Assembly: GCF_003918875.1 (NCBI RefSeq)
Contig: NW_025767547.1
Span: 124,001 to 188,000, forward strand
DNA from: Haliotis rubra
Taxonomy: Eukaryota
Length of the DNA: 64,000 bases
Direction: 5' to 3'
Numbering within the stretch: the stretch's first letter is position 1; each line of letters starts with the position of its first letter. The notes beneath the pieces are model-generated. The model was not told where the DNA came from. It saw only the letters and a list, made by a program, of their open reading frames with translations, and made no database searches. The position numbers and the translations under genes were made by a program. Of the stretch, positions 607-38,900 are shown in pieces.

Positions 607-3600
607 GGCTAACGATCACGTAGATGAAAGTCTTACGCTAGTGTATGCAGCATGTTCTATTCCCACGTGGTTGGTGACCCTCATATCCAAAGCTCTTCAA
701 CCTCTGGTGAGTAACCTTAGCACATTTGGGACGATATTTCTCTGTGGCCGATATCAAAGTTGTGTTCCAAATTTGGGATATCACTTTCTTGTTCTCAAGT
801 GGAGATATCACAGTTGTTTTCCTCAGTGGGGGATATCACGGAGTAGTATATCATAGTAGAATTTCTAAGTTCATGGTACTACAAAGTAGTATTTCCAAGT
901 GGTGGATATTATATGTGTTTTCTGGGTGGAGAATATTACAGAGTAGATCTAGTATTCCTAAATGAGGGATATTACAATGTATTTTCTCTAAGTGGGAAAT
1001 ATTACAAAGTATTATTTCTACATGGATGATATTACAGACTAACATGTGCAAATGGGTGATATCATCCAGTCTTATCCATGGGCAATCCATACCACCATAT
1101 TTAATGACAGATGTTGTCCTTTCAGGACCCTGTTTTGGCGAAATCCTTCCAGAAGTTTACAGGAGTGAAGTAGGTTACCTGTTCGTTGTTCTTGGTGGAC
1201 TTTTATGACAATGAGTTGAACATTTATGTAAATGAGAATTGTATGAAATAACTGGAACAGAATAAATACTTTTGTAAATATTTTTCAGGTCAGTGTATGA
1301 CTGGTACAAGGTAGCAGTCAGAATCCAGGTCAGTGATGAGTTGGATGGCATGGATTGTTGTCAGATGGGATTGAGTTGGGTGGCATGGATTGTTGTCAGA
1401 TGGAATCGAGTTGGGTGGCATGGATTGTTGCTAGATGGGATTGAGTTGGGTGGCATGGATTGTTGTCAGATGGGATGGAGTTGGGTGGCATGGATTGTTG
1501 TCAGATGGGACTGAGTTTGGTGGCATGGATTGTTGTCAGATGGGGACTGAGTTGGGTGGCATGGATTGTTGTCAGATGGGGACTGAATTGGGTGGCATGG
1601 ACTGTATTCAGAAGGGATGGAGTTGGGTGGCATGGATTGTTGTCAGATGGGGACTGAGTTGGGTGGCATGGATTGTTGTCAGATGGGACTGAGTTGGGTG
1701 GCATGGATTGTTGTCAGATGGGGATTGAGTTGGATGGCATGGATGGATGTCGAATGGGGACTGAGTTGATGGCATGGATGGATGTCAGATGGGGACTGAG
1801 TTGGGTTGCATGGATTGTTGTCAGATTGGATTGAGTTGGATGGCATGGATTGTTGTCAGATGAGATTGAGTTGGATGACATGGATTGATGTCAGATGGGA
1901 TTGAGTTGGTGGCATGGATTGTTGTCAGATGGGATTGAGTTGGATGACATGGATTGATGTCAGATGGGATTGAGTTGGTGGCAAGGATTGTTGTCAGATG
2001 GGATTGAGTTGGATGGCATGGATTGTTGTCAGATGAGATTGAGTTGGTGGCAAGGATTGGATGGCATGGATTGTTGTCAGATGGGATTGAGTTGGGATGA
2101 TTGTTGCATGGGGAGTTTGATGTGTTGTCAGATGGGGATTGAGTTGGGTGGCATGGATTGATATCAGATGGGGATCGAAAGTTGGTGGGATGGATTGATG
2201 TCAGATGGGATTGAGTCGGTGGGATGGATTGTTGTCAGATGGGAGTTTGATTGGTTGTCAGATGGGATTGAGTTGGTTGGATGGATTGATGTCAGATTGG
2301 GATTGAGTTGGGTGACATGGATTGATGTCAGATTGGGATTGAGTTGGATGACATGGATTGATGTCAGAAGGGGATTGAGTTGGTGGCATGGATTGTTGTC
2401 AGATGGGATTGAGTTTGGTGGCATTGATTGTTGTCAGATGGGGATTGAGTTGGGTGGCATGGATTGATATCAGATGGGGATCGAGTTGGTGGGATGGATT
2501 GTTGTCAGATTGGATTGAGTTGGGTGGCATGGATTGTTGTAAGATGGGATTGAGTTGGTGGGATGGATTGTTGTCAGATTCGATTACAGAGGCCCAGATA
2601 AGCTGCGTATCCGGGTAAAATACGCTTAGAAAATTTCCAATTACGCATTGAAAAGTAATTGTTAAAATTACCAATTCACGCATTGAAAAATGTTAGATAA
2701 TGTTAAAAAGTTTAAAACAAATAAATGCACGGAATATATTTATAAAAATCGCTAGCATAATGAAAAGCCATGGATTGCTATCAAGTTGTACTGTAAGTAG
2801 AGGACTAGTGTTGCACTGTCAGTACAGGATGGATGCAATAATTTCCCTTATATTTAAGTTGGTTTTGATTAGGTATGACATGAGGCAGAACATACCTGCT
2901 TAGTAAACTTACACAATGACATAATACTTAGGTGAGTAAAATGACTGAAATACGCACATATTTGAAAGCAGTGGGTAACAGAAAATGAAATACCCACTCG
3001 ACATTCATAATACCCACTCCAAAAAAATGCATTGGGTACAGTACCCACATGAGCTAAATCTTATCTGGAGCTCTGGGATTAAGTTGGGTGGCATGGATTG
3101 TTGTCAGATGGGATGGATTTGGTTGGCATGGATTGATGTCAGATGGGATTGAGTTGGTGGGATGGATTGTTGTCAGATTGGATTGAGTTGGGTGGCATGG
3201 ATTGTTGTCAGATGGGATTGATTTGGTTGGCATGGATTGATGTCAGATGGGATTGAGTTGGTGGGATGGATTGTTGTCAGATTGGATTGAGTTGGGTGGC
3301 ATGGATTGTTGTCAGATGGGATTGAGTTGGGTGGCATGGATTGTTGTCAGATAGGGTTGAGTTGGATTGCATGGATGGATGTCAGTTGGGGATAGAGTTG
3401 GATGGCATGGATGGATGTCATATTGGATTGAGTTGGGTAGCATGGATTGATGTCAGATGGGGATTGAATTGGTGGGATGGATTGATGTCTGATGATAATT
3501 AATGGAACAGAGGTCGAGGCTGAACACTGATAGAGACAAGAATGACTTTGGATGAACTTGGTCTGCAGCTCAGCAGATGAGAACAAGATGTATGGTCTAA

Positions 3601-5831
3601 GGGTCAATTCAAGGTCGTGACTGATGGGGGGATAGGGGAACTGAGTTCAACCAGGGATGTACATAGGGAGGGTTTGTGGGGTAATGGATTTGGACAGAAT
3701 GATGTGTAGATGGTGGACAGGGTGAAAGTTTGCACTGTATTTAGACTGATTGTGGCAAGAGGAGTTGAGGGAGTGGGTGAAGGCAGTGGGGACAGAAGGA
3801 ACACCCTGATGGATCTGTCTCCAACTGAGGTAGCTGACTGCTGTGCTACACATGATCTGGCACTATAGTTTACCTAGTTGCATTTCTTATCTTAAATCAT
3901 GGATTAATTTCTTTGTTACTTTGGTTACAGAACTACAGAAAGGAGTTTCTGGAGCACTGGCGCAGACAGGACTTGGATGCCGTCATCTGCCCTGTATATC
4001 CATGTCCAGCTGTGGTTCTCAGTAGTGCAGGGAAACTGACGGGTGAGTCAAGTCATCTGTCCAGTTGATTCAGATAGAGCTACATTTCTTAGAAGTGAAG
4101 GGAAAATGACGAGGTTGGCCAAGTTATCAAACAAGGATACCTAATCTAAATCATGTGTTAAACATGTGTCTCCAATCTTAATTAATTTTTGTATGTGTGT
4201 TTGTGTGTGTGACATGTCGAGGTTTTATTTGTAATGTGTTGTTTGAAGCCGGTGGTTCCTACTGCGCCCTCTACAATGTGTTGAGATACTCTGCTGGATC
4301 CATTCCTGTTACAACGGTGACCGAAGCAGACGTACAGGAAGTGGCAGATCCAAAGGTGTACCCAGCTACTACGCTGCTGGAAAAGCTTGTCAAACGGGTG
4401 AGTCTTCATCTCTCACCATAAGTCTTCATCTCTCACAATAAGTCTTCATCTCTCACAATAAGTCTTCATCTCTCACAATTAGTCTTCATCTCTCACAATT
4501 AGTCTTCATCTCTCACAATAAGTCTTCATCTCTCACAATAAGTCTTCATCATCTCTCACAATAAGTCTTCATCTCTCACAGTTAGTCTTCATCTCTCACA
4601 ATAAGTCTTCATCTCTCACAATAAGTCTTCATCAATAAGTCTTCATCTCTCACAATAAGTCTTCATCTCTCACAATAAGTCTTCTGCATCTGTAGGAGGA
4701 ACTTAATCACTGTGTTCAAGTGTGACTGCAGTGTCTTTTCTTACAGGATTATATATTAATTCCGGCTTGTGAGCCTGTCAAAACTTCATGGGTTTGTGGT
4801 AATGGTGGCCCGATTAATTGAAATAATCGAAGATTGGTCGTAGTGACTAAACGACCAAACAATCGATCATAATTTCTCATAATCGAACACAAACAATTCT
4901 GGAACACTTGTTTTCATTAACAATATTTTTCACATGGTTGGTTTTGTCTGTTACATTTCGTAAGCACTACAATCTCGTTTCAAGACATGATTGAATTTAT
5001 CTTAAAAATTCTAAGAAATTTATGTTCCTAACATACTAGTCATCCTTTAAAGATGTGAAATTTTGCCCAAAAAAACCCAAAGAACTACATGTTTTTTCCC
5101 CTTATTTTTATGTGCATTAACAAATTTCATAAATGACATTAACCAATTATTTTCTATGATTGATTGGTGGTAATGAACCAATCATCAATTATGAGATTTG
5201 AACCAATTCCCAACACTAGTTTGTGGACACTCCATCACCAGTAAATATGTTTCTCTTACAGATCCCACAGCATATGTTAATAAAGTATACCCCCCTAGCC
5301 CATTCTCACACCCATTGTCAGCTATTGTAGGAGCCAAAAGGTTAACCATGGACAGTATTCACTAGCAGATTACTAGAATACACAATGCCATTTAGAAAGT
5401 GGTGAAATGTAACATATGTTATATTTGGGATTACAAGTACAGATTCTTGAACATTTATTAGGTTAAGTCCGATCCGGGATTTGAACCCTCACAAATCAGG
5501 CATCTAATTGCACATGCACAAAGTCCGAGATCTGAACCTCTCAGCTTCCACAAAACTGAAGTCAGACAACTTATAGTCAAGATCACAAACTTTGTGTACC
5601 CTTCTGACTGTATTTACTGAGAGGATTACTAATCCATTTATACTTTTGTAAAGCACTATGACTGCTGTACACATTCCTGTACATTTCACACTATGGAATA
5701 TGCTCTTCCGGTTGCAGGGTTCAAAGGGCAGCGAAGGTTTGCCCGTGAGTGTGCAGTGTGTGTGTCTGCCGTACCATGAGGAGCAGGTGCTGAGGGTGAT
5801 GCACGATGTTGAACGAGGACTCAGAACATAG
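607..5831 (+). CDS. FAAH: FAAH/vitamin D3 hydroxylase-associated protein-like amidase, paralog A, 3' part (5' exons lie upstream of the window)
   Basis: Six GT-AG exons in continuous frame: 607-706, 1126-1169, 1289-1328, 3931-4042, 4249-4397, 5718-5831 (TAG). They encode ...SVYDWYKVAVRIQ/NYRKEFLEHWRRQDLDAVICPVYPCPA.../YCALYNVLRYSAGSIPVTTV.../[29 protein letters not shown], the FAAH C-terminal motifs. Sizes and phases mirror exons 12-17 of paralog B. The symbol denotes the family, not proven orthology. Confidence 0.9.
770..1060. repeat. Degenerate tandem repeat of about 30-40 bp (TTTCTAAGTGGGAGATATTACA-like)
   Basis: Recurring ggatatcac/gatattaca and tttctaagt/ttccaagtg motifs. Confidence 0.55.
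1329..3490. repeat. Minisatellite of about 35 bp (GTCAGATGGGATTGAGTTGGGTGGCATGGATTGTT) starting at a splice donor and interrupted by a MITE
   Basis: About 45 copies. The first unit begins at the GTCAGT donor of exon 1289-1328. Confidence 0.95.
2587..3075. mobile_element. Non-autonomous TIR element (hAT-like MITE) inserted into the minisatellite
   Basis: 16-bp TIRs CAGAGGCCCAGATAAG / CTTATCTGGAGCTCTG. Related ends occur at 27209-27540. Confidence 0.75.
4401..4683. repeat. 20-bp minisatellite (AGTCTTCATCTCTCACAATA), about 14 copies, starting inside the donor GTGAGT
   Basis: Visible array. The first unit overlaps donor positions +4 to +6. Confidence 0.95.
4800..5218 (+). mobile_element. hAT-type MITE, family 1
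   Basis: Ends TAATGGTGG...CCCAACACTA with a perfect 8-bp TSD GTTTGTGG. Homologous to 48658-49141, 53136-53563 and 62100-62490. Confidence 0.9.
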
Positions 5832-8786: not shown

Positions 8787-9463
8787 GCTCCTTCCTTTCC
8801 TGGCTTTCACTCACGCTCTCTCCTTCCTTTCCTGGCTTCTTTCCTGGCTCTCACCTCTCCTCCTTCCTTTCCTTCCACTCCTCTCTCCTCCTTCCTCCTT
8901 CCTTTCCTGGCTCCTCGCTCTCTCCTTCCTTTCCTGTCTCTCCTGGCTCTCACTCACGCTGTCTCCTTCCTTTCCTGGCTCTCACTCACTCTCCTTCCTC
9001 CTTCTCTTCCTCCTCTCCTCTCTCACTCACGCTGTCTCCTTCCTTTCCTGGCTCTCACTCACGCTCTCTCCTTCCTTTCCTGTCTCTCACTCACGCTGTC
9101 TCCTTCCTTTCCTGGCTCTCACTCACGCTCTCTCCTTCCTTTCCTGTCTCTCCCTCACGCTCTCTCCTTCCTCTCCTGGCTCTCACTCACACTCTCTCCC
9201 TCCTCACCTGGCTCTCTCACGCTCTCTCCTTCCTCTCCTGGCTCTCTCATGCTCTCTCCTTCCTTTCTTGTCTCTCACGCTTTCTCCCTCCTCTCCTGGC
9301 TCTCACTCACACTCTCTCCTTCCTCTCACTCACGCTCTCTCCTTCCTCTCCTGGCTCTCTCTCATGCTCTCTCCTTCCTTTCTTGTCTCTCACGCTCTCT
9401 CCCTCCTCTCCTGGCTCTCACTCACGCTCTCTCCTTCCTCTCCTGGCTCCTTCCTCTCTCTCT
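8787..9463. repeat. Polypyrimidine minisatellite (about 30 bp, TCCTGGCTCTCACTCACGCTCTCTCCTTCCT)
   Basis: Low-complexity CT-rich tandem array that accounts for the S/L/P-rich ORFs. Confidence 0.9.
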
Positions 9464-9534
9464 TGACATTCTCATGTCTGCATTTTAAGCAGCAGGTCAG
9501 ATAGACCTGGAGATGCAACACACAGCTGTCTTTA

Positions 9535-12419
9535 TTACTCAGCTTCTGAAAACAGTACGTCAATGACTAATGTCATGACGTACATGAAACATTTATCTTT
9601 AAATCTTACAGTCCTCATGATATCGCCCATTTGGGGCATAAACAGATTGGGAATCTGTAGCTTTCCAGTGAGCATATGTCTAAAGCATTCAAGACTGCCT
9701 TGAAGCATGTTCAGTGTGTCCTTTATCCTGCCAGAGTGTGTACCCTGATCCCAACTTTTTATCATACATCAGTGTCCACATCAACATCCTTATCGGGTAC
9801 GTCCCCACGCCCAATTTTCCACAGTCTTGGAACAAATGCTCTTTTGTGTACTTTGCTGCTTTAATCAGTTGCTTCGTGACTCTTGTGTTTGTACTAATAG
9901 CTGTGTCGCCTTTGGCGATCTCCTTAGCCCGCTTGATAATTCTTAGGGTGGGCTTCCAGGATTTCTTGTCTGCGTGTTTGGAGAGCATTTTCTCAGCATA
10001 AGTGAAGCTCATCTTCCATTGTAGTGCTTTGTCCCCGGTACATCAGCTTTAACAAACAAACAATCATTTGATGTTGTAGAAAAACATCAGAAAAACATGG
10101 TAATCAATTAATCAATATACCGGTATGTTGTGTGATATGTGCAGCAGAGGAATTCCATTGCAACAGTTCTGGTCATTCAATTAAAATTGTTGTATCATAC
10201 ATTTGTTTAGATTATGAGCATTAGAAAAAAAGGAATATTAATCTGATAAGTGTGCCGCTCTTCAGGATCCTCACCTTTACAATGCTTCATGACTGTAACA
10301 AATCCTTCAGCCATTATCTCTTTAGGATCAATCTCACTGGGCAAATCAGTGGACAATTTCTTCTGTAGATTGTTGGCAAAGGGATAGACTGGCCACTCGT
10401 CAACATGAATGGCTGCAACGAAGTCGATCTCGATGTTCGGCAGCTCTCGCCTTGTCTTGTAGATGACACGGTAAGAAGGACTTTCAGGATATGTGAGATC
10501 CTCTGTAAGGAAAGGTGATTGTATGGTCACAATGAACCACAAGTAAATGAGCAATATTTCCCATATTTCTCAGGGTTTATTTTCGGAGGGAAGAGATGTA
10601 GGGTGAAGGTGTTTCTTGGTATAGTGCTGAGAAAGAGACAAACATGGTGAATCTCGAAATCAAATAATGGCACAAGGATGCATTTTATTTCCATTACCCA
10701 TTTCTTGTTCTTGTCCTTTACTTTTTATTTTTACGTTTTTTATTTGTATGTGTATCAATGACATCAAGTCTTTGAGCTTGACTATCCAATCTATTTTGAT
10801 AACTCTACAACAAGCATGGTTGCCTGGGAAACAATAGCCTGGAAATTTAGTTTTCTGATGAGAAGCATGACAAAAATATCTGTTTGCTCCAGAAGGGTCT
10901 CCGTCAACAGCAATCGCCACGTTTTATAACTGACAATAGTAAAACAGACGTGCTTAATATGTTAATATATCTTAATATCTTAATAATAAAAAAAACACAC
11001 TCTTAATAATTCTCCGAGAGCTTTGAAATTGATCCATTTTGTCAAAGAAGTATCCTCTGAACTTGTCCATATTGATGAATCCTTCATCACAGAGCATGTG
11101 TATTGGATCCTTTCTGTGGTAATTCACCTCCAGCCTACAGTGGCTAGGTTCACATCCTTCATAGATGGGTGTTATTGAGTCATCTAATCTTGGTATAAGT
11201 TGACAGTCCATCTCATTAGGCCTGGATACCTGTAATGGAATGTAACATCTGCTATAATAACTACAGTTTGCACAGTTTTAGAACATAACAATATTGTTAG
11301 GAAGAATGCAAGTTCACTCTCCTATTTGGGGAATAATTCATTTCTTGCTGACTCACTAGTTCATGCTAATGAGTCCATTAGTTTAACTGGTTACCAAATG
11401 CAACATTATATTGCACATAAGCACTTTCCATTCTTTTGAGGGTGTTATTAATTATGTTGTACAATTTGGTTTGTTGCTTCAATTATATCCTTGTTATTTA
11501 TGTTATTTTCTCAAAATTTGAGGGACTGCTATAATTACTTTCATTAGTTTCTCTCTGGTTCAAATGTATTAATGATTAAAATTCAAAATTTCAAGAATAT
11601 AATAGAAATGAGGAGAAAGTAATGAAAACAATGAAAAAACTCTGAAAGCTTAGGAAAACAATAAGCGAAATATCGAGGTCTTCTAGATAAATATAAAATA
11701 TTTATTTTGCTCCCAAACGCAGGGACAAGTAATGCCAAAAAACGGCATCAACCTATATGCTGTCACTGACGGGATCTTAGCACTAAATAGAAGGTTGGTG
11801 TGTTTGTTGTTTAAGGCAGCACTCCGCAATATTCCAGCTACAGTATATGGCAGCGGTCTGTAAATAATCAACTCTGGACCAGACAATCCAGTGATCAACA
11901 GCATGAGCATCAATCTACGCAATTGGAATACGATGATGTGTCAACCAAGTCAGCGAGCCTGACCACCCGATCCCCTTAGTCCCACGGCACCCATAGATTA
12001 CTTAAGACTAATTCTTCACGTGTCCACAATGCTAGTGAAGAATAATAGAAGAATGCTAATAGAAGAGTGCTAAGGTCCCTTCATTAACAGTATATACCAA
12101 GATGCCAGAGGTTTTGCTTTACAAGCTCCTGTGCTCCCAAACTGCACCCTTAGATGCTTGTCTGAAATACCTTGGTTCCATCATAGTAAGATCCTGCTGA
12201 AAATGTCCTCCACGTCCATGGAGTGACCTCGTCAAGATATGAGATCACATCAGACCTCAGTTCATTGAAATTGTCTGCAATTTCACTGATTTCATCCTGG
12301 TCCAAACTGACTTCCATTCCTAAGAAGTCCCGTAGATCAGTCTTTGGTCTTTCCGGGTGATGAATTATGCCTTTTCGCACCATTTCGTTCACAAAAGTGT
12401 GCATCCTCAGTGTATTCAT
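9535..12419 (-). CDS. Mab-21/cGAS-like receptor (cGLR) nucleotidyltransferase, about 400 aa, with 1-2 apparent frameshifts in the last exon
   Basis: Exons 12419-12171, 11229-11001, 10502-10275, 10046-9535 (GT-AG, compatible phases). Motifs: FSAGSYYDGTK/VSRPNEMD, SPSY...IEIDFVAAI..WP, QWKMSFTYAEKML, LRIIK, TYPIRMLMW, IPNLFMP. Frame breaks fall in homopolymers at 10033-10036 and 9756-9760. Confidence 0.85.
11797..12020 (-). mobile_element. SINE family 2 copy in a cGLR intron
   Basis: Shares GGTGGTCAGGCTCGCTGACTTGGTTGACAC...GATCACTGGATTGTCTGGTCCAG...GCTGGAATATTGC with copies at 30203-30416, 42415-42660, 49462-49592 and 63475-63680. Confidence 0.8.
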
Positions 12420-13419
12420 CTGTGAGAAATAACATTATTTTAGTAAGAGATCATGATCAATTCTACTTGGGTCTATATTCATCAAGATCGGTACTTTTGT
12501 GTAGCAGTAGAGATTCTTCCAATTAATTTTCCATGACTGTTGGTTGCAACAAATGATTGAAGAAGAGCCAGTAAAATCAATCAATGCTTCCACTGAATAC
12601 GCAATGCCAAGCAGGCTGTATCAAGCCATTTTTTTAGTGTAAACCCTATAGGTTGCTAAGCTTTTTGTTTATATAGTATTGTGGACTTTCCCAACCTTTT
12701 TAGCAACAATCATGTGTAAGTTTCATAATGGTAGCTACGCCCCTGCCAAGTGGTCAAACTTAATGTAACACGGGGGGTTTAGTGATCAAACTTAATGTAG
12801 CACAGGGGGTTTAGTGATCAAACTTAATGTAACACATGTTATATTTGGGATTACACTTTCTCAGTACAGTACAGATTCTAGTACTTTTGGTGGGTTGAGT
12901 TCCATCAGGGATTCGAACCTACTCCCTCAGAGTCAGGCACCTAATCGCCAGCACACAAAGTTAGTCGCCTGACCCACTCAGCCATCGCAGTGGCTCTATG
13001 GGTTAAGTAGTTGACTAAAGTACTAGAATACTTCCATTGTAAAAAGTTATTAGAATACTACCACCATTACATAATTGCAGTGAATATGCTCTCCTTATGT
13101 CCAAATTAGGATCTTTTGATTCACATTAGAGATCACAGCTTGAAGAAGTGACCGGGACATTAAGATTTCCATGGTATTAACTAAAGGTTATGTTTATTGG
13201 TTTGTTGATCTCTGTTAAAAAAAACCAAAAGGTCAAAAAAGAATTTTTCTTTATATTGAAATATTGCCATCCACATAACAACAGATAAACATTTAAAGTT
13301 ATCTTGAAATATTATACACATATCCATTTCATATCAGTAGCTCACTTGCCAACAAAATTAAAGCATAAACATAATAACTGTAGTCAGCCACTCCCTCATC
13401 AAAAGGCTAACCCACTGAG

Positions 13420-15759: not shown

Positions 15760-16611
15760 GTGCCACCGAAGTCCTCGAAACCACAGGTTCAATCGACACT
15801 ACAGCTTGATTTACCAGAAGTATTTTCGTTTGGATCTTGCAGTACGCCGAGATCAACGACGCAAACCAAGATGGCGACCCCCACACAACAGAGCGGGACA
15901 AGTCACGGCGACCAGAACCAGGACCTCTCCTACCCGTCTACACTGTTTAATTTCATCAGTGATGCTTCCATGGATGTGATCACTACGAAACTGAGTAATG
16001 CACTCATGTTACCAGCTCTACAGCAGAAGTTCAGGGAATCGTTTGTGACTGTCGCTAAAGAAGCGCTGAAAGACATAATACAGGATGTTGTGGCCCCTCT
16101 CAAGCAGGAGATACGTGATTTGAGAGTCGAACTCCACCTCAAGACTGACGAGCTAGAACAGTACAGTCGGAGGAACTCTTTGAGGATATCGGGAATCAAG
16201 GAACCCAAGTGGGGAGAGGAGGGCGAAAATATTGAGGAAGTTGTGCTGGAGGTCCTTAAGGATGTGCACTCGGATATTTCACCCACAGATATTGACAGGT
16301 GCCACCGGGTGGGCAAGAAACAGCGAGAACAGAACAGGAGCATATTGGTGAAGTTTGTGAGTTATTGGGACAGAAACAAAGTGATCAGGAACAAGTTCAA
16401 GCTCAAGGGTAAAAGAGACAATATCTACATCAACGAGGATCTGACAAAGTACAGAAATCATCTGTTCAAGCTCGCCAGAGATCTGAAGAAGGAGCAGAGG
16501 ATCTATTCCACCTGGACATACGATGGCAGGGTTTATATCTGTGAACAGTTGGAAGGACTCATTCGTGTCATTCAAAGTGAGTCTGACCTCGACAAATATA
16601 GGCGTCAGTAG
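15760..16611 (+). CDS. LINE ORF1 (coiled coil + RRM + CTD nucleic-acid chaperone)
   Basis: LEQYSRRNSLRISGI...DIDRCHRVG...RSILVKF...IYINEDLT...TWTYDGRVYI. The first in-frame ATG is at 15871. Confidence 0.9.
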   Translation: MPPKSSKPQVQSTLQLDLPEVFSFGSCSTPRSTTQTKMATPTQQSGTSHGDQNQDLSYPSTLFNFISDASMDVITTKLSNALMLPALQQKFRESFVTVAKEALKDIIQDVVAPLKQEIRDLRVELHLKTDELEQYSRRNSLRISGIKEPKWGEEGENIEEVVLEVLKDVHSDISPTDIDRCHRVGKKQREQNRSILVKFVSYWDRNKVIRNKFKLKGKRDNIYINEDLTKYRNHLFKLARDLKKEQRIYSTWTYDGRVYICEQLEGLIRVIQSESDLDKYRRQ

Positions 16612-16986
16612 TGACTTAAATGTGTTTCACATTCATGCTTGGCTTATATGTTAAAGGTATTCAAATATGTAAGTATGTAAATATTTATTTATTTATTAAT
16701 TGTATGTACCATATAAACACACAACACAGTCTGTCTTTCTTCTTGTTTATGTTTGTATTAAATTGTGTATATACTATTCTTAATCTCACCTTTAAACTTT
16801 ACAACTCTCAAGTTACATTTCCGAGTACACATGTATCCAAAACTGAATCACTGTATATATCCATTTTTCTGTCTTCCTCTTTAGAACAACTGAGAGATTC
16901 TGTATTGCCAATCCATGATATACTATCAAATTCATTATCATGTCTGCAGATAACCCGATCTGGTATCCGCACGTGTATCTACCAAC

Positions 16987-19900
16987 ATGAAATCAACAAG
17001 CCGTATGGGTAATGACATAATGCAACACCGTGCGGCGATCGGGTCATTCAACTGTTTCACGTGTTCTAGTAGCAATAAGAAATGTTCGAAAACCAGTAGC
17101 TTACTTGCTGACAAAAATGTACTAGCCAGGTTCCTATGCATTGAAGCAGAAACTGTGTGTAATTTACTATTGTTGGAATTGAAAGCTTGGTGCGTGTTTT
17201 TGTATTTATGTCTACTTCAATCACAGGCTACAAATGTCAATATCATCCTGATTTTTCTATTGTTACTTCAGCTTGCTGGTGACGTAGAGTCTAACCCAGG
17301 ACCTATTGTTCAGACAGACAACTTACTGTCTATTTTTCACTTGAATGCTAGAAGTATTCGTAATAAGCAATCTTATTTGTCGGAATTTTTATCTGAATAC
17401 GATGTTGTTTGTTTCACGGAGACTCATTTAGACTCAAGTATAGATAATGAAACAGTGGCCTGGGAAAAGTTTCATGACCCGATACGTAGAGATAGAAATG
17501 CTTTTGGGGGTGGTGTTATGATGTATATATCTCGACATTTAACTTTTGACAGACTTTCAAATCTTGAAAATATGTATGATGAATCTGTATGGGTTAAAAT
17601 ATTTCTTCCACAAAAAACCATTAATCATTTGCACAGTTTACAGGCCTGAAAGTAATACTGCCAACTTTTGGAGCAGATTTGACAATAGCATTGAAGGTGC
17701 TTTAGATATTTCAAGTAAAGTTACCCTTGTCGGTGACTTGAATGAAAACTTACTTTCCACATCCAATCTAAACCTAACAGACATCTTACTTAGAAAAAAC
17801 TTACGTAATGTTATAACGGAACCCACAAGGGTGACTAAGACAACTAGCACTCTTTTAGATCCAATAGTTGTTAGTGACGAAGTTGATGTTGTTGAAAGTG
17901 GTGTTGGTGATTTTGATAAAAGTATAAGTGATCACAAAGGCACGTTTGTCAGCCTTGATGTACATGTATCAACTAAAGTTGCATATCCTAGAAAAGTTTG
18001 GTGTTACAATAATGGTGATTATGAAAAACTGAATGCACTTGTTAGCAGTACGGATTGGATGTCACTATTTACTGACTGTTCTAATGTTGAAGATGCTTGC
18101 TGTGTATTTTATGAACGTTTTAACGATTATACCAAACAATGTATTCCTTCTAGAATTGTGATGATACGATCTAATGACAAACCATGGTATGACTCAAATA
18201 TTCGACGTGAAAGTAGGAAGCGGGATCGACTGAGAAAAAAAGCTAGGAGAACACGGAAGGAAACTGATGTTATGAAATACAAAAAACAGCGTAATAAAGT
18301 TAATAATATGAAATGCTATGCTAAAGAACATTTTTATTCAAATCTTGACGAATTTGTATTCAAACTTTATGGTGAAAATAAATCATCATATTGGAAAATG
18401 TTACGCAGTTTGATCAAGACGTCAGGTTCTGCTTCCTTCATTCCAGCTTTGAAAAGAAATGTAGATGAAGGTTGTCCATCAGCTTTTTCAGATTTTGATA
18501 AAGCAAATATGTTAAATGAATATTTTGAGTCTATATCTAATTTAAATGGTGCAGATACCACTTGTTTACCACATTTTGACAAGCGTACCGATGCGGTATT
18601 GGAAAACATTACAATCGAAGTTAATGAGGTTGCAGATATCATTAAATGTCTTACTCTTAAGAAAGCTGCTGGGCCAGACCTGATTAGTCACCAATTACTC
18701 AGAAAAACTGTTAATTCCATCAGTCCAGTCCTGTGCATATTATTTAATATGTCACTAAATTTGTGTGTGTATCCTAGCCAATGGAAGTATGCAAATGTTA
18801 TGCCTTTATTCAAGAAAGGTGACCATTCGGTTGTATCAAACTATCGCCCAATTTCACTTATTAGTTGCGTTGGGAAGTTGTTTGAAAGAGTTGTGTTTAA
18901 GCATGTTTATAATTTCTTTGTGTCAAACGATTTGTTATACAAATATCAGTGTGGCTTCCGGAGAGGTCATTCTACTGTACATCAACTTGTAGAAATTTAT
19001 AATCAAATTTGTACATCACTCGATAACAAAGAATACTATTGTATGGTCTTTTGCGATGTATCAAAGGCCTTTGATAGAGTTTGGCACAGAGGGCTTATGC
19101 TTAAATTAGAGATGTATGGAGTCAGTGGAAAACTCCTTGATTGGTTTAATAGTTATGTAACTGATCGCAATCAATCAGTCTTTGTTAATGGGTCGCTATC
19201 CAAGCCTATGGTGTTGAAAGCAGGAGTTCCCCAGGGATCAGTTTTAGGCCCATTTCTTTTTATTGTGTATGTAAATGAGATAGCTGATAAGCTACATTGC
19301 ATAACTCGGCTTTTCGCTGACGATACTTCACTGGGAACTTTATCAAAGGACAAACAAGTGATGGAAAGAGCCATGAATGAAAATCTAAAAATATTAAACG
19401 ATTGGGCAAAGGTCTGGTTAATTTCCTACAATCCGGAAAAACTGAAGCTATATTATTTACTTTGAAAGATGGCAAAAAAGACATTAATTTGAAGTTTGAT
19501 AACTGCAATATAAAAACAGTCGATTTTCATAAACATCTGGGTTTAATCTTCACGTCTAACGGGAGCTGGCATCATCATATTGAAAACATTATCAAAAAGA
19601 CATCTAAAATGATTGGATCATTTCGGAAATTAAAGTTCTTATTAAATAGAACAACACTAGCGAAAATATATACTGTATTCATAAGGCCACACTTTGAGTA
19701 CGCATGCGAGGTATGGGATGGATGTTTAATTGAACAAGCTAATAGATTAGAAAAACTTCAACTTGAAGCAGCGCGCATAGTTACTGGTCTTCCAAGATAT
19801 GCATCTTCCAGTTCATTGTATTACGAAACGGGATGGGATTTACTTTCTGAGAGAAGGAGAAGACGCAAATTAACATTATTTTATAAAATTAAAAAATGCC

Positions 19901-20481
19901 TGACACCAGTTTTTCTTCAAGATTTACTCCCACCTGTAGTTAGCAACCAGACAAGTTATGAGTTAAGAAACTCAAATAACTTTAGTCAACCATATACAAG
20001 ACTGAGGTACTCAACGTCATCTTTTATTCCATCAACAGTTAAAGTGTGGAATAATATTCCCTTAGCTATTAGAAATTGCGACTCTGTTGCCACGTTTAAA
20101 TCTTATATCCACGTGCAGGAAAAATGTGCACCTATATATTATTCATATGGAATAAGGAAGTTCAATGTTATGCACACTAGATTAAGATATATGACGAGTA
20201 CACTTAATTATGATTTATATAGAATAAATGTAAAAAATGACGCATCATGTCAATGTGGCCATAGATGTGAGAATGTTTTTCATTACTTCCTTGAATGTCC
20301 TTTGTATACTATTCAAAGACATAAACTGTTAAAATCTTTAGAACATATTGTCAAAAATAGAACACTGATTGATATTAATCTTATCTTACAAGGCAATGCA
20401 GGTCTCTCAATCACTGACAACCAGAATGTTTTCAAATATGTACATATCTATATCTCTCAAACAAAACGCTTTCTCAGTTAA
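16987..20481 (+). CDS. LINE ORF2: leader, 2A peptide, APE endonuclease, reverse transcriptase, Cys/His C-terminus; two single-base frameshifts
   Basis: APE: HLNARS, CFTETHL, RRDR..GGGV, VYRP, GDLN, SDH. RT: NYRPISL, DVSKAFDRVWH, GVPQGSVLGP, FADDT. C-terminus: CQCGHRCENVFHYFLECP. Frames switch at A-runs 17612-17617 and 19437-19441. Confidence 0.92.
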
Positions 20482-25388: not shown

Positions 25389-25886
25389 CTCAATAAGATA
25401 CATGTCATCTGTAGCTGGCCTTGGCGTGTACAGTCCGTCTGTATATATTAGAGTGTGTTTTTTTGCTCATGGGCATTTATAAGTGTCGCAGGCCTTGGAG
25501 TTAATCCCTCTGATGACATCTATACCATGTCAGCTTGCTGATGGAGTTAACCTCCTTGGTCATGTGGACAAGGCGTTTGACCTCAGATCAGATGGTCTGT
25601 GGATCAAATCCCACCATGTTACATATGTTAATGCTGTTGTAAATTAATTAATATATTTTAACCCGACTACTACCGAACACTCTGCATTGCACTATTTCCT
25701 GGACGAGTCTCTTCCACACCCCAGAGCATATATCTGGTATGCTTATCCACACCCCAGAACATATGCTTGATATGCTCTGGTGTGGTCATTCACATCCCCC
25801 CAGAGCATATATTTAACATGCTCTGGCATGCCATCCACACCCTTTACAGAGAAATTCAAGATCCCTGCATTGGACCGATTAGACAA

Positions 25887-26525
25887 CTTATCCTTCCCAG
25901 TACACATGACGAGGCAGGACATCAAGGTATTGAGTGTACACTCAGTCTTTTAAGGGATCGTTGTTTCTGGCCAGGCATGTATAAGGATGTGGAGAACTGG
26001 TGCAAAGATTCCACAAGGTGTGCTGTTGCAAAGATGCCACAACCAAAGATTAGACCACCATTTGGCCATCTTCTCGCAACGAGACCCTTAGAAATTGTAG
26101 CCATGGACTTTACTGTTCTGGAGCCCTCTACAAGTGGCAAAGAGAATGTTCCGGTAATCACTGATGCCTTCACATAGTTTACAGTGGCAGTTCCTACGAA
26201 GGACCAAAAAGCAATGACCACAGCTAAGGCATTAGTTTCTGAATGGTTCCACCAATATGAGCCTCCCCAGAGAATTCATTCTGACTAAGATAGGAATTTT
26301 GAGTCAGAGGTAGTAAGCAGTTTATGTTCTCTGTATGGTGTACATGAGAGCCTAACCACTCCATACCACCCTCAAGGAAATGGACAGTGCGAGCGGTTCA
26401 ACAGAACACTACATGAACTGCTTAGAACACTGCCAAAGGATAAAAAGAAGAAATGGCCTGATTATCCTCCGAAATTGTTGTATTATTACTCTACTCCCCA
26501 TTCATCCTCAGGTTTTTCACCATTC
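25887..26525 (+). mobile_element. Ty3/Gypsy integrase relic (pseudogenised)
   Basis: HDEAGHQG...FWPGM...C; PLEIVAMDF; ITDAFT*; RIHSD*DRNFES; TTPYHPQGNGQCERFNRTL. In-frame stops are present. Confidence 0.92.
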
Positions 26526-29760: not shown

Positions 29761-29943
29761 AAGCAATAAGTACAGACAACAATGAAAGAAGAATGATCAA
29801 AGCAATATAGTCCCAGTCACTGGGCAGGTAAAAACTAATGTACAGTATTGTGAACATACTAGGAAGAAAATGACCTTGTCCACATTTAATGCTGTATTCA
29901 TCCTTCATGCCTCTGTGTTTGTTTCCAGACCCGGTGGGTGAAG

Positions 29944-35900: not shown

Positions 35901-38900
35901 ATTAATGCATAAAAATATAAAGGAAATACAAATGTTATTAGTATTTTTGACTACATCACGAAAATTACCAATCATGGTCACGGAAATTGCCGATCGTAAT
36001 GGGGGGAACCAGTTCGCGAAAAGTGTACAACAATATATCGTATTGTAATGTTCGAATTGCAATATACCGGTTAACCAGTATTATCATCCAAAATGTTCCA
36101 CAGGAGATATATCGCTTGTGTGAGATCAAGCGATATCTCCCTAGGAGATATCGTTTTGACAGTAGACTTTGTACAATGCCCTGACAATGCTATGACGTCA
36201 TGTACTTGATGGCGTCACAATGCTATGACATCGCTGCACTGCAAGTCTAATGGCAGTACCATGTCCAGAGATGTACATTTTTCATTGAAAATTAATGAGG
36301 AGTGATTTTGGATGATAAATAGAATCTCACCTCGTAGTGATCTTCTGATATCAAAATATCAACACTCGTTGATAAAGTAAAAATATCCTCGGCAAGCCTG
36401 GGATATTTGTAACTTTATCAACTTCGTGTTGATATAATTGATATCAGAAGACACTTGGGTGAATTCTCTATTTATAGCCAGCCATATAAGAGACTTTGAA
36501 TCTTCTTAAAATCACTGAAAAACAAGTCACAGTCATGATTTGGTTCAGTTGAAGCGACACAATAATATACAAGTAACAATTATATTTGGTTCTCACAGTT
36601 ATTTTTTCTGGAAGATAGAAAATGCTTGAGGGTTAAGTTTCATAAAACAGAAGCGCAGGTGTTTTTTCTAACTGAGAGCTTTCCCACCAAATCTGACAAT
36701 TAAAACATTCATATATATCTGTGTCAAATATAATTTAGAAAAGGGAGTAAAATATTACTTGCTGGTGTACATGTACTTGAAGAGATTCTTAAAAGTAATG
36801 TGAATTCTCAGCACTTCTGTATCATGATTCAGTCAAGGCACTAAAAATACATAGGTTGGATCCATTAGATATAAACAATATATTTGCCGTTGGATTTTTT
36901 ATTATTCTGTCCCATGAACTCCGTCTTCAAATACAAAATAAATCTTTAAGGACATTCACATGTTACCATATCGCTGTAAGAGGTGAGATATTTAATACTG
37001 TTTATGAGATTTAACCCAAATGGCAAACTTAAGGATACCATCACTGTATGTTGAAATAGTTAAGTGAGATGTTTCTGTCTGAATGTTGTGGGTTTGCTGC
37101 AGGTGTTGAAATCTCAAGGCGCCATTCCGTTTGTCCGCACCAACATTCCCCAGACTATGATGACGTGAGTACTGCCCACTTTGGCCGCCCTTCCCCTTAA
37201 GATGTTGCTCATGATATCAATCACTGGTTTGTCTGGCTCAACCTGATTTTTTATGGGTTGCCATCATAAGGCTGGAATATTTCTGAACAATGAATTTTGG
37301 ACTTTTGGATCTTTTGTCTTTGTGCAAGGGTTATCCCCCTTTGTTTTATGTGCCAAACTGATTCATATGATGTTACTGTGGGATTCTGGGTAAGAACATA
37401 AGTCTCAGCATCCAGGACTTGTAATAAGAGATGGATCAGGTCATCTGACTTAGTTGGCGCATGTGTGCTTATCTCATTTGTGTAGATTGAGGCTTATGCC
37501 ATCAATCACCAGATTATCAAGTCCAGATCTGATTATTTACAGACAATATGTACAGCTAAATTGCTGTGAATAGCTGCTAGATAGCTGATGCAGCATTAAC
37601 CAATATTCACTCGCTCACATTAGCTGGAATATTGCCAAGTGCCCCATTAAACAACAAACAAACAAACAAACACATGTATGTTATTTATTTCAGATTCGAC
37701 AGCTCCAATCCTATATATGGGGAGACTCTAAACCCTCACGATCTGTCCCGTAGCCCTGGTGGTTCATCAAGTGGTGAGGGGGCGCTCATTGCGTCAGGGG
37801 GATCCTGTCTGGGTTTGGGGAGCGACATTGGCGGCAGTATCCGTATCCCGTCCCACATGTGTGGTGTGTGTGGCCTCAAACCGACCGTGGAGAGACTAGG
37901 GTAAGCTAGTCATACAATACCGTGGCCTCAATCCGACCGTGGAGAGACTTGGGTAAGCTAGTCATACAATACCGTGGCCTCAATCCGACCGCGGAGAGAC
38001 TTGGGTAAGCTATTCATACAATACCGTGGCCTCAATCCCCGTGAGAGACTGGGTAAGCTTGTCCGCGTGGCCTCAATCCGACCGCGGAGAGACTTGGGTA
38101 AGCTAGTCATACAATACCGTGGCCTCAATCCGACCGTGGAGAGACTTGGGTAAGCTAGTCATACAATACCGTGGCCTCAATCCGACCGTGGAGAGACTTG
38201 GGTAAGCTAGTCATACAATACCGTGGCCTCAATCCGACCGTGGAGAGACTTGGGTAAGCTAGTCATACAATACCGTGGCCTCAATCCGACCGTGGAGAGA
38301 CTTGGGTAAGCTAGTCATACAATACCGTGGCCTCAACCGACCGTGGAGAGACTTGGGTAAGCTTAGTCATACAAACCGCGTGGCCTCAAACCGGCAGCGG
38401 AGAGACTTGGGTAAGCTAGTCATACAATACCGTGGCCTCAAACCGAATCGTGGAGAGACTTGGGTAAGCTAGTCATACAATACCGTGGCCTCAAACCGAC
38501 CGTGGAGAGACTTGGGTAAGCTAGTCATACAATACCGTGGCCTCAAACCGACCGTGGAGAGACTTGGGTAAGCTAGTCATACAATACCGTGGCCTCAAAC
38601 CGACCGTGGGAGAGACTTGGGTAAGCTAGTCATACAATACTGTGGCCTCAAACCGACTGTGGAGAGACTTGGGTAAGCTAGTCATACAATACCGTGGCCT
38701 CAAACCGACCGTGGAGAGACTTGGGTAAGCTAGTCATACAATACCGTGGCCTCAAACCGACTGTGGAGAGACTTGGGTAAGCTAGTCATACAATACCGTG
38801 GCCTCAAACCCGACCGTGGAGAGAGACTTGGGTAAGCTAGTCATACAATACCGTGGCCTCAAACCTCAAACCGACGTGGAGAGACTTGGGTAAGCTAGTC

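What the first reader, a model, noticed from the sequence alone, without database searches (positions are those of the whole stretch)
9535..12419. Divergent cGAS-like receptor nested between two FAAH paralogs
Seen: the spliced minus-strand gene keeps the nucleotidyltransferase signature hxGS-x11-EMD...IEIDF and the Mab-21 C-terminal pattern (W..SF..AEK, LRIIK, IPNLFMP). Established: cGLRs are animal innate sensors that make cyclic dinucleotides and are expanded in molluscs. Unusual here: there is no vertebrate Zn-ribbon, the usual SYHLKT reads TYPIRM, and a basic insert of about 40 aa (RAKEIAKGDT...TKQLIKAAKYTKEHLFQDCGK) follows LRIIK. Inference: the insert may be a distinct ligand-binding surface, implying a new ligand or product specificity. 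The gene is split over five unrelated-looking ORFs and is easily missed.
Basis: partly seen in the sequence, partly recalled or inferred. Interest (0 to 1): 0.72.

Follow-up and report, generated by a model that had tools for sequence, protein, structure and literature searches.

The report
Abalone cGAS-like receptor gene, mis-assembled
This is a real, transcribed abalone gene for a 404-residue cGAS-like immune sensor enzyme that looks broken only because the reference assembly carries three spurious bases; it is a new member of a known family, not a new kind of system.

Summary
On the minus strand at 12419..9535 lies a four-coding-exon Mab-21/cGLR gene with an intact GS...E-x-D...D active site, no zinc ribbon, TYPIRM, and a 43-residue segment after LRIIK. 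It sits between two FAAH-like amidase genes, as it does in H. cracherodii.

Corrections:
- The window is Haliotis rubra. RefSeq calls this gene LOC124262095, a 247-aa "uncharacterized protein".
- There are four coding exons, not five. The last two ORFs are one exon, broken by homopolymer assembly errors (GGGG for GG at 10033-10036, AAA for AA at 9722-9724). Short-read contigs of the same organism lack these bases, and dropping them gives an open 404-aa frame.
- Contigs from probable RNA runs cover only the exons.
- Orthologues in H. cracherodii (72%) and H. asinina (81%) are already named "cGAS-like receptor 1".
- An AF2 model of the H. asinina orthologue matches oyster Cv-cGLR1 (Z 28.1) and cGAS (Z about 27).
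- The segment occurs in every member of a clade found only in Haliotis. Its charge is not conserved and it is weakly constrained, so it is not specific to this gene.

The enzyme's activity, ligand and product were not tested. The scan had already noted other cGLRs in this genome. Verdict: new member of a known kind, modest interest.

The parts
12171..12419 (-). Coding exon 1 (249 nt, residues 1-83). The ATG at 12419 directly follows a canonical acceptor (ttctcacag|ATG), so an untranslated 5' exon lies further upstream, beyond 12600. Contains G76-S77 at 12189-12194.
   Evidence: Identical to RefSeq product P0008. X9 contigs end at 12419 with 27 unmatched letters beyond it (table 8).
11230..12170 (-). 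Intron 1 (941 nt), holding a very high-copy interspersed repeat at about 11754-12074.
   Evidence: table 2: depth is up to 6e7 in the repeat, and zero in X7/X9 elsewhere in the intron. No Rfam or tRNA match.
11001..11229 (-). Coding exon 2 (229 nt, phase 0 to 1). Contains the catalytic E89-M-D91 at 11206-11214.
   Evidence: X7 and X9 contigs lie at 11001..11221 and 11001..11231 (table 8).
10275..10502 (-). Coding exon 3 (228 nt, phase 1 to 1). Contains I183-E-I-D186-F at 10420-10434, the third catalytic acid.
   Evidence: X5/X7/X9 contigs lie at 10276..10481. D186 aligns with the Asp of IDVDL in Cv-cGLR1.
9535..10046 (-). Coding exon 4 (512 nt in the window, 509 nt by the reads), with stop TAA at 9535-9537 and AATAAA at 9531-9536. 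Contains WKMSF, LRIIK (9932-9946), TYPIRM (9785-9802) and IPNLFMP (9634-9654).
   Evidence: The acceptor at 10047-10048 is the one used by the RefSeq model P0008 and by the H. cracherodii orthologue.
10033..10036 (-). Assembly error 1: GGGG in the window, GG in the reads. It shifts the frame 10 bases into exon 4 and causes the 247-aa RefSeq truncation (tail ...ADVPGTKHYNGR*).
   Evidence: table 4: '10033 left out 2' in X1 at 146.6 of 146.6 depth. H. cracherodii reads CCGGAC here. P0008 tail.
9722..9724 (-). Assembly error 2: AAA in the window, AA in the reads.
   Evidence: table 4: one letter left out at 9722 in X1 (146.6/146.6) and at 9723 in X7 (50.7/50.7). Removing it aligns WQDK-DTLNML with both orthologues.
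9803..9931 (-). The 43-residue segment R274-G316 between LRIIK and TYPIRM. In the AF2 model of the orthologue it contributes the end of one helix, a short helix, a second helix and a loop. It is a trait of the whole Haliotis clade.
   Evidence: length 43-44 in 8 proteins, net charge 0 to +5. (helices 270-283, 287-291, 296-309; pLDDT 51-66). (dN/dS 0.35).
5658..5828 (+). Last coding exon of the upstream FAAH-like amidase gene (flank, not part of the cGLR).
   Evidence: matches FAAH1 residues about 501-541, E 6e-7.
37632..37901 (+). Amidase-signature exon of the second FAAH-like gene (flank). By reading only, its first exon appears to start near 29938.
   Evidence: Pfam Amidase, E 5e-32. for the N-terminal ORFs.

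Best explanation
The locus is the Haliotis rubra orthologue of the abalone gene that NCBI names 'cGAS-like receptor 1' in H. cracherodii and H. asinina. It is an intact, transcribed gene with four coding exons. Its product is a 404-residue core-only cGLR: a Mab-21 nucleotidyltransferase lobe plus a helical C-lobe, with no N-terminal extension and no zinc ribbon.

Shown here:
- the gene structure;
- the two frame breaks are assembly errors;
- the catalytic GS and acidic triad are kept;
- purifying selection acts on the gene;
- coverage in probable RNA runs is restricted to the exons;
- a cGLR/cGAS fold for the close orthologue;
- conserved position between two amidase genes.

Inferred from the family:
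- A ligand binds the face opposite the active site. This orders the active site, and the enzyme joins two NTPs into a cyclic dinucleotide that acts as an immune second messenger.
- The ligand and product are unknown. The nearest characterised relative, oyster Cv-cGLR1, is activated by dsDNA and makes 2'3'-cUA.
- The near-neutral charge of this orthogroup (pI 6.3-8.7) makes a nucleic-acid ligand less certain than for its basic paralogues.
For: Gene model:
- Splice sites are canonical.
- Exons 1-3 and the exon 4 acceptor are identical to the RefSeq product P0008.
- The H. cracherodii locus has the same four exons with the same phases.

Assembly errors:
- The X1 contig over 9421..11868 has 0 substitutions and lacks 2 bases at 10033 and 1 at 9722.
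- Dropping them gives an open 404-aa frame that is collinear with both orthologues.

Expression:
- In X7 and X9, exons have depth 20-100 and introns 0-8.
- Contig ends fall at 12419, 12168, 11001 and 10276 (tables 2 and 8).

Family:
- Pfam Mab-21 scores 27.9 bits on P0008, 39.9 on P0007 and 45.1 on P0001, against a cut-off of 24.1.
- phmmer of P0007 against 8gjw gives E 6.8e-24.
- Foldseek gives 8gjw at E 1e-13.
- VIA-align gives Z 28.1, rmsd 2.9 over 328 residues to Cv-cGLR1, and Z about 27 to cGAS.

Active site: AGS-x11-EMDC ... IEIDF.

Selection: dN/dS is 0.18 overall and 0.11 in the NTase lobe.

Synteny: Amidase genes lie on both sides in H. cracherodii and here.

Cv-cGLR1 ligand and product: PMC9980059.
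Against: - No activity, ligand or product was tested.
- The full-length window protein itself could not be handed to Pfam or AF2, because a spliced, corrected sequence has no reference. The fold evidence therefore rests on an 81%-identical orthologue.
- That model is of only middling confidence (mean pLDDT 63.7, 10-sequence alignment).
- The C-lobe of this orthogroup gets no Pfam Mab-21_C hit and evolves fast (dN/dS 0.59).
- The residue before GS is Ala, not the Gln/Thr of the published motif.
- Core pI is 7.6, below the >8.5 reported for nucleic-acid-sensing cGLRs.
- The RNA nature of X7 and X9 is the tool's guess plus my reading of the depth profile. No splice joint was printed, because the table was filled by the intron repeat.
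- A paper reports no STING in the H. rubra protein set (PMC11103948), so the usual downstream receptor may be missing.
Confidence: 0.8

Rival explanations
1. One reading: the segment after LRIIK is a new ligand-binding surface that gives this gene a new ligand or product specificity.
For: - An extra helix plus loop of roughly 23 residues relative to cGAS and Cv-cGLR1 does exist. The model has 377 residues spanned against 346 in 8gjw, with 328 aligned.
- It lies next to the helix that, in the phmmer alignment, corresponds to CRKDIFRLLKK of Cv-cGLR1. From my own knowledge, not tested here, that region contacts DNA in cGAS.
- It is net +5 in this gene.
Against: - It is present at the same length in all clade members, including basic paralogues with zinc-finger arrays, so it cannot define this gene's specificity.
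- Net charge is 0 in the H. cracherodii orthologue.
- dN/dS is 0.35 and few columns within it are invariant.
- pLDDT is 51-66.
- Its position relative to the ligand face could not be measured, because no coordinates were available.
- Product specificity is set in the active-site pocket, not there.
Confidence: 0.12
2. It is an active cGLR whose trigger is not a nucleic acid (or it is constitutively active), and it signals to a receptor other than canonical STING.
For: - Core pI is 7.6 (6.3 and 8.7 in the orthologues), against 8.9-9.6 for paralogue cores.
- Li et al. report pI >8.5 for the dsDNA and dsRNA sensors, and propose non-nucleic-acid ligands for acidic cGLRs.
- STING is reported absent from the H. 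rubra, H. laevigata and H. midae protein sets.
Against: - pI is a crude proxy and varies by 2.4 units among three orthologues.
- The STING absence comes from searches of annotated protein sets built on draft assemblies. This locus shows such sets can be wrong, and I could not search the genome.
- The closest characterised relative senses dsDNA.
Confidence: 0.2
3. It is a non-catalytic Mab-21-like protein (as MAB21L1/2 are), acting as a scaffold or regulator rather than as a synthase.
For: - The C-lobe is divergent, with no Mab-21_C hit.
- Ala replaces [QT] before GS.
- Paralogue P0002 lacks the third-Asp region, so loss of catalysis may occur in this clade.
Against: - GS, E89, D91 and D186 are kept in all three orthologues.
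- The NTase lobe is the most constrained part (dN/dS 0.11).
- The active enzyme Cv-cGLR1 also departs from [QT], having Ser.
Confidence: 0.07
4. It is a true pseudogene in H. rubra: the two frameshifts are real.
For: - The window as assembled has stops after residue 247.
- RefSeq annotates a truncated product.
Against: - Short-read contigs of the same organism, with zero substitutions over 2.4 kb, lack all three bases at full depth.
- A third 2-base homopolymer excess lies in intron 2 at 10988, which is typical of long-read indel error.
- X7 transcript contigs also lack the base at 9722-9723.
- The two shifts sum to 3 bases, and the corrected frame is collinear with the orthologues.
Confidence: 0.03

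Closest known systems
Cv-cGLR1 of the oyster Crassostrea virginica (PDB 8GJW). It is dsDNA-activated and makes 2'3'-cUA (PMC9980059).
   Same: - It is the best sequence and fold match: phmmer E 6.8e-24 over residues 45-286 of the orthologue, and Z 28.1, rmsd 2.9 over 328 residues.
- It has the same GSYYD-x-TK...NE-x-D, ID-x-D and W-x-x-SF-T-x-AEK motifs.
- It has no vertebrate zinc ribbon.
- It is also from a mollusc.
   Different: - Identity is only about 22%.
- The sequence match stops at the helix ending ...EIAKG, and the C-lobe is not recognisable by sequence.
- The abalone protein has about 30 more residues spanned by the structural alignment (377 against 346), including an extra helix and loop.
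- The crystallised Cv-cGLR1 core is residues 288-633 of a longer protein, whereas this one is core only.
- The ligand and product of the abalone protein are unknown.
Vertebrate cGAS
   Same: - Same bilobed Mab-21 NTase fold (Z about 27, 320-333 residues aligned).
- Same GS and E-x-D...D catalytic set.
   Different: - About 16% identity.
- No H-x5-CC-x6-C zinc ribbon.
- No disordered basic N-terminus.
- Near-neutral pI.
Haliotis paralogues: P0002, P0003, P0004, P0005 and P0009/P0010. These include cGLRs fused to zinc-finger arrays or Ser-rich repeats.
   Same: - Same clade. They are the only proteins besides the orthologues that the C-terminal piece finds among 1.84 billion representatives, apart from one unnamed 4090-residue ENA protein (P0006) at E 7e-5 with no listed stretch.
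- Same 43-44-residue segment.
- Same invariant WKP-x-x-R-x-x-KR-x-x-EIAKG helix.
- Two of them lie on the same H. rubra contig.
   Different: - 32-39% identity.
- They have long N-terminal extensions and basic cores (pI 8.9-9.6).
- They keep TYHIRT and score on Pfam Mab-21_C (P0002 excepted, at E <= 0.01). This orthogroup has TYPIRM and does not score.
Drosophila cGLR1 (dsRNA sensor, makes 3'2'-cGAMP; PMC8410604)
   Same: An invertebrate cGLR without a zinc ribbon. By family logic it shares the same mechanism.
   Different: It was not compared directly here. No close sequence match appeared in the PDB search beyond a weak hit to the Mab-21 domain-containing protein 7lt2.

Membership tests
cGLR (criteria of Li et al., PMC9980059) | Catalytic residues: GS, then [DE]h[DE]h, then h[DE]h. 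| tested here: met
   G76-S77, 11 residues, E89-M-D91-C, then I-E184-I and I-D186-F. All are kept in both orthologues. D186 aligns with the Asp of Cv-cGLR1.
cGLR (criteria of Li et al., PMC9980059) | The strict published pattern h[QT]GS X8-20 [DE]h[DE]h X50-90 h[DE]h. | tested here: not met
   The residue before GS is Ala75, not Q or T. The spacing is 90 residues to IEI but 92 to the aligned IDF. The biochemically active Cv-cGLR1 has Ser at the same position, so this position is not decisive.
cGLR (criteria of Li et al., PMC9980059) | Sequence homology in the N-terminal NTase core (Pfam PF03281 above its gathering score). | tested here: met
   The window's own exon 1-3 product (P0008) scores 27.9 bits against a cut-off of 24.1. 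The orthologues score 39.9 and 45.1 bits.
cGLR (criteria of Li et al., PMC9980059) | Sequence homology in the C-terminal helix bundle (Pfam PF20266, Mab-21_C). | tested here: not met
   No hit for the exon 4 pieces or P0007 at E <= 1, nor for P0001 at E <= 0.01. Paralogues P0003-5 and P0009 at 32-33% identity do pass (31.8-36 bits). The C-lobe is covered only by the structural match.
cGLR (criteria of Li et al., PMC9980059) | Predicted structural homology to known cGLRs over both lobes. | tested here: met
   The AF2 model of the 81%-identical orthologue P0007 aligns over residues 29-405 to 8gjw, with Z 28.1 and rmsd 2.9 over 328 residues. Caveat: mean pLDDT is 63.7, and it is not the window's own sequence.
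cGLR | [quoted passage not shown] | not testable with these tools
   This needs recombinant protein and NTP assays.
Vertebrate-type cGAS | Zinc ribbon H-x5-CC-x6-C between the SF-x-x-EK strand and the following helix. | tested here: not met
   That interval holds only H258, H307 and C311.
MAB21L1/2-type non-catalytic Mab-21 proteins | Absence of a complete NTase active site. | tested here: not met
   The active-site residues are complete, so the gene is not filed there.

The most novel reading that the evidence does not exclude
This near-neutral, core-only cGLR orthogroup may sense something other than nucleic acid. It carries a Haliotis-specific helix-loop-helix where cGAS has its zinc thumb and adjacent DNA-contact helix. 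It may also signal without canonical STING, in a lineage reported to lack it. If so, it would give a cGLR pathway with a new trigger and a new receptor.
Probability: 0.1. Interest if true: 0.7.

Novelty: new member of a known kind. Interest (0 to 1): 0.3.

Why it matters
- It corrects a public annotation. H. rubra LOC124262095 is not a 247-aa unknown protein. It is a complete 404-aa cGLR hidden by three spurious homopolymer bases. Such errors can make immune-gene inventories of draft mollusc genomes misleading, and the published claims about cGAS/STING content in abalone rest on such protein sets.
- Abalone suffer a lethal herpesvirus, so a defined, expressed cytosolic sensor candidate is useful for aquaculture immunology.
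- The Haliotis-only clade has an extra helix and very different charge between the core-only orthogroup and the finger-fused paralogues. That makes it a compact natural series for asking how cGLR ligand surfaces diversify.
- None of this changes what is known about how cGLRs work.

Tried and rejected
- Single exon pieces against Pfam and PDB were nearly uninformative. The best results were Mab-21 at E 0.08 on exon 3 and 8gjw at E 0.012 on the exon 4 piece. I therefore spent the one exhaustive protein search on the 101-aa exon 4 piece.
- I first placed the exon 4 acceptor at 10027 to avoid an in-frame stop. I rejected this once the reads showed GG for GGGG, and once the RefSeq product and the H. 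cracherodii gene both used the strong acceptor at 10047-10048.
- A small intron between the fourth and fifth ORFs is rejected. The overlap is 77 bases and offers no GT...AG pair further than 16 bases apart.
- The word-index search with the orthologue, and then with a six-sequence alignment, found only Haliotis proteins. No deeper alignment or family-wide tree could be built.
- The look-up of encoding contigs had no record for P0007.
- Rfam and tRNA scans of the intron 1 repeat found nothing.
- The C-terminal 154 residues of P0007 against PDB gave only chance matches to designed helical repeats.
- The supplement of PMC9980059 lists only H. rufescens (2 cGLR, 1 STING) among Haliotis.
It was used only inside scripts.
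Full report
**What is there**

Reading the minus strand of 9400..12700 and the ORF list gives a gene with four coding exons:

| Exon | Window coordinates | Length |
|---|---|---|
| E1 | 12419..12171 | 249 nt |
| E2 | 11229..11001 | 229 nt |
| E3 | 10502..10275 | 228 nt |
| E4 | 10046..9535 | 512 nt as assembled |

- All introns are GT-AG.
- The ATG at 12419 directly follows an acceptor site, so an untranslated 5' exon must lie upstream.
- AATAAA overlaps the stop codon.
- There is no Cys/His cluster that could form a zinc ribbon.

**The breaks are in the assembly, not in the gene**

- As assembled, the concatenated exons translate cleanly for 243 residues, run out of frame with stops for about 100 codons, then return to frame.
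- I laid four public runs on 9400..12600. Run X1 is DNA of the same organism. It covers 9421..11868 in one contig with zero substitutions.
- That contig has 5 missing letters: two at 10033 (GGGG run), one at 9722 (AAA run), and two at 10988 (intron). Each is missing at full depth.
- X7 also lacks the base at 9722-9723, and half of X5 lacks the two at 10033.
- Dropping the three exonic bases gives an open 1215-nt frame and a 404-residue protein.
- The H. cracherodii gene reads CCGGAC at the start of exon 4.

**Whose gene it is**

- The 101-aa exon 4 piece was searched against 1.84 billion representatives and found six proteins.
- The word-index search with the best hit named them:
  - P0001 is 'cyclic GMP-AMP synthase-like receptor 1' of H. 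cracherodii (406 aa).
  - P0007 is the same name in H. asinina (408 aa).
  - P0008 is 'uncharacterized protein LOC124262095' of H. rubra (247 aa).
- P0008 is identical to the window's exons 1-3. It ends in the frameshifted tail that the extra GG produces.
- The window is therefore H. rubra, and RefSeq's truncation is a consequence of the assembly error.
- The read-supported protein is 81% identical to P0007, 72% to P0001, and 32-39% to the paralogues.

**Transcription**

- X7 and X9 are small runs that the tool guesses to be RNA.
- They cover exons at depth 20-100. Introns 1 and 3 have depth zero outside the repeat, and intron 2 has depth 4-8.
- Their contigs stop at 12419, 12168, 11001 and 10276, which are the exon ends (tables 2 and 8).
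- That pattern is what spliced RNA with a little pre-mRNA gives, and it is not what DNA gives.
- No joint row for these introns was printed, because the joints table was filled by the intron 1 repeat. Splicing is therefore shown indirectly, plus by the RefSeq model.
- These runs are labelled as a different organism (B). They carry two forms of exon 4 at similar depth over 9770..9993. One has 3 differences and the other has 23 differences plus a 3-base insertion at 9822-9823. That is exactly where both orthologues have one more residue.

**Family and fold**

- Exon pieces alone are too short for Pfam.
- The window's own exon 1-3 product passes Pfam Mab-21 (27.9 bits, cut-off 24.1). The orthologues score 39.9 and 45.1 bits.
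- None of the three hits Mab-21_C, although paralogues P0003-P0005 and P0009 do.
- P0007 matches PDB 8gjw at E 6.8e-24 and cGAS chains at 1e-6 to 1e-3.
- 8gjw is the oyster C. virginica cGLR. That enzyme is dsDNA-activated and makes 2'3'-cUA.
- The AF2 model of P0007 used a 10-row alignment and reached pLDDT 63.7 and pTM 0.64.
- That model matches 8gjw at Foldseek E 1e-13, and at Z 28.1, rmsd 2.9 over 328 residues.
- It matches mouse, pig and human cGAS at Z 26-28 over both lobes.
- I could not submit the window's own full protein, because a spliced, corrected sequence has no reference.

**Constraint and synteny**

- Against the H. cracherodii coding sequence, which I rebuilt from L001 and which translates exactly to P0001, dN/dS values are:

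| Region | dN/dS |
|---|---|
| Whole gene | 0.18 |
| NTase lobe | 0.11 |
| WKMSF..LRIIK stretch | 0.04 |
| Segment 276-320 | 0.35 |
| Last 84 residues | 0.59 |

- dS is about 1, so these values are rough.
- In H. cracherodii the gene lies between two Amidase genes on the opposite strand.
- In the window, the C-terminal FAAH exon at 5658..5828 and the amidase-signature exon at 37632..37901 bracket it in the same way. A LINE element lies in between.

**The 'insert'**

- The 43-44 residues between LR(I/T)(I/L)K and TY(P/H)IR are present at the same length in all eight clade members I examined.
- Net charge of the segment runs from 0 to +5.
- In the model they give the end of helix 270-283, a short helix, helix 296-309 and a loop, at pLDDT 51-66.
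- Which helix is extra is ambiguous:
- phmmer aligns the first, invariant helix (WKP..R..KR..EIAKG) with CRKDIFRLLKKIKEVMK of Cv-cGLR1.
  - In the paralogues, Pfam's Mab-21_C profile starts at the second helix. Its spacing to TYHIRT is 18 residues, which from my memory is close to that in cGAS. That would put the invariant helix where vertebrates have the zinc thumb.
- Either way it is a clade trait, and it is not the most conserved element.

**Charge**

- The core pI is 7.6 for this protein, 8.7 for P0007 and 6.3 for P0001. The paralogue cores are 8.9-9.6.
- Li et al. report pI >8.5 for dsDNA- and dsRNA-sensing cGLRs, and suggest other ligands for acidic ones.
- This is a weak hint that the orthogroup's trigger may differ from that of its paralogues.

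**Context from the literature**

- cGLRs number over 3,000 in animals and exceed 200 per genome in some bivalves.
- A survey of abalone immune genes found Mab-21-only 'cGAS' genes in H. laevigata. It found no STING in the H. laevigata, H. rubra or H. midae protein sets, but did find STING in H. rufescens and H. discus hannai.
- Li et al.'s table lists H. rufescens with 2 cGLR and 1 STING.
- I could not test STING absence. This locus shows that protein sets from these assemblies can be wrong.

**Verdict**

The gene is a cGLR and it is intact.
- The 'five ORFs' are four exons plus assembly errors.
- The special role proposed for the insert is not supported by what could be tested.
- It is a new member of a known kind, already named in two sister species.
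- Earlier notes of this scan record other cGLRs in this genome: one with eleven fingers 27 kb before the window, and a decayed cluster elsewhere.

Noticed in passing
window 11754-12074 (intron 1 of the cGLR): A very high-copy interspersed repeat. Summed contig word depth reaches 6e7 in DNA runs and 5e4 in the RNA-like runs, with hundreds of rearranged joints. There is no Rfam family and no tRNA-like structure.
   Followed up: partly
window 8788-9449: A CT-rich minisatellite (32-base unit, about 20 copies, with 115-base higher-order units). It begins about 90 bases downstream of the cGLR stop codon and produces long spurious ORFs on both strands.
   Followed up: partly
window 10988: A third homopolymer excess (2 bases) relative to the same-organism short-read contig, in intron 2. 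There is also a C-to-G difference at 12354 in all four runs, synonymous in Pro22. The assembly has residual indel errors that can break other gene models.
   Followed up: partly
window 9770-9993 (exon 4), runs X5, X7, X9: Organism B carries and expresses two forms at similar depth. One has 3 differences from the window. The other has 23 differences plus a 3-base insertion at 9822-9823, in the variable segment. These could be alleles, hybrid parentage or a recent paralogue, and this was not resolved.
   Followed up: no
window 15760-20481 (+): A LINE element. ORF1 is 15760-16611. The ORF2 region has endonuclease and reverse-transcriptase matches (RVT_1, E 1e-32). A D-V-E-S-N-P-G-P 2A-like motif lies in the ORF at 16987-17649, as another first-stage note says.
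   Followed up: partly
window 1293-3600: Long arrays of a degenerate tandem repeat giving repetitive ORFs on both strands (GMDCCQMG.. / ..NNPCHPTQSPSD..). They lie upstream of the last exon of the first FAAH-like gene.
   Followed up: no
window 25767-26177 (+): An ORF that looks like the zinc-binding and start of the catalytic part of a retrotransposon integrase (..CFWPGM..W C..C..C..). This is by reading only.
   Followed up: no
P0002 (H. cracherodii paralogue), alignment A2 columns 170-203: This finger-array cGLR paralogue, as annotated, lacks the stretch holding the third catalytic Asp. It is either a skipped exon in the gene model or a catalytically dead paralogue.
   Followed up: no
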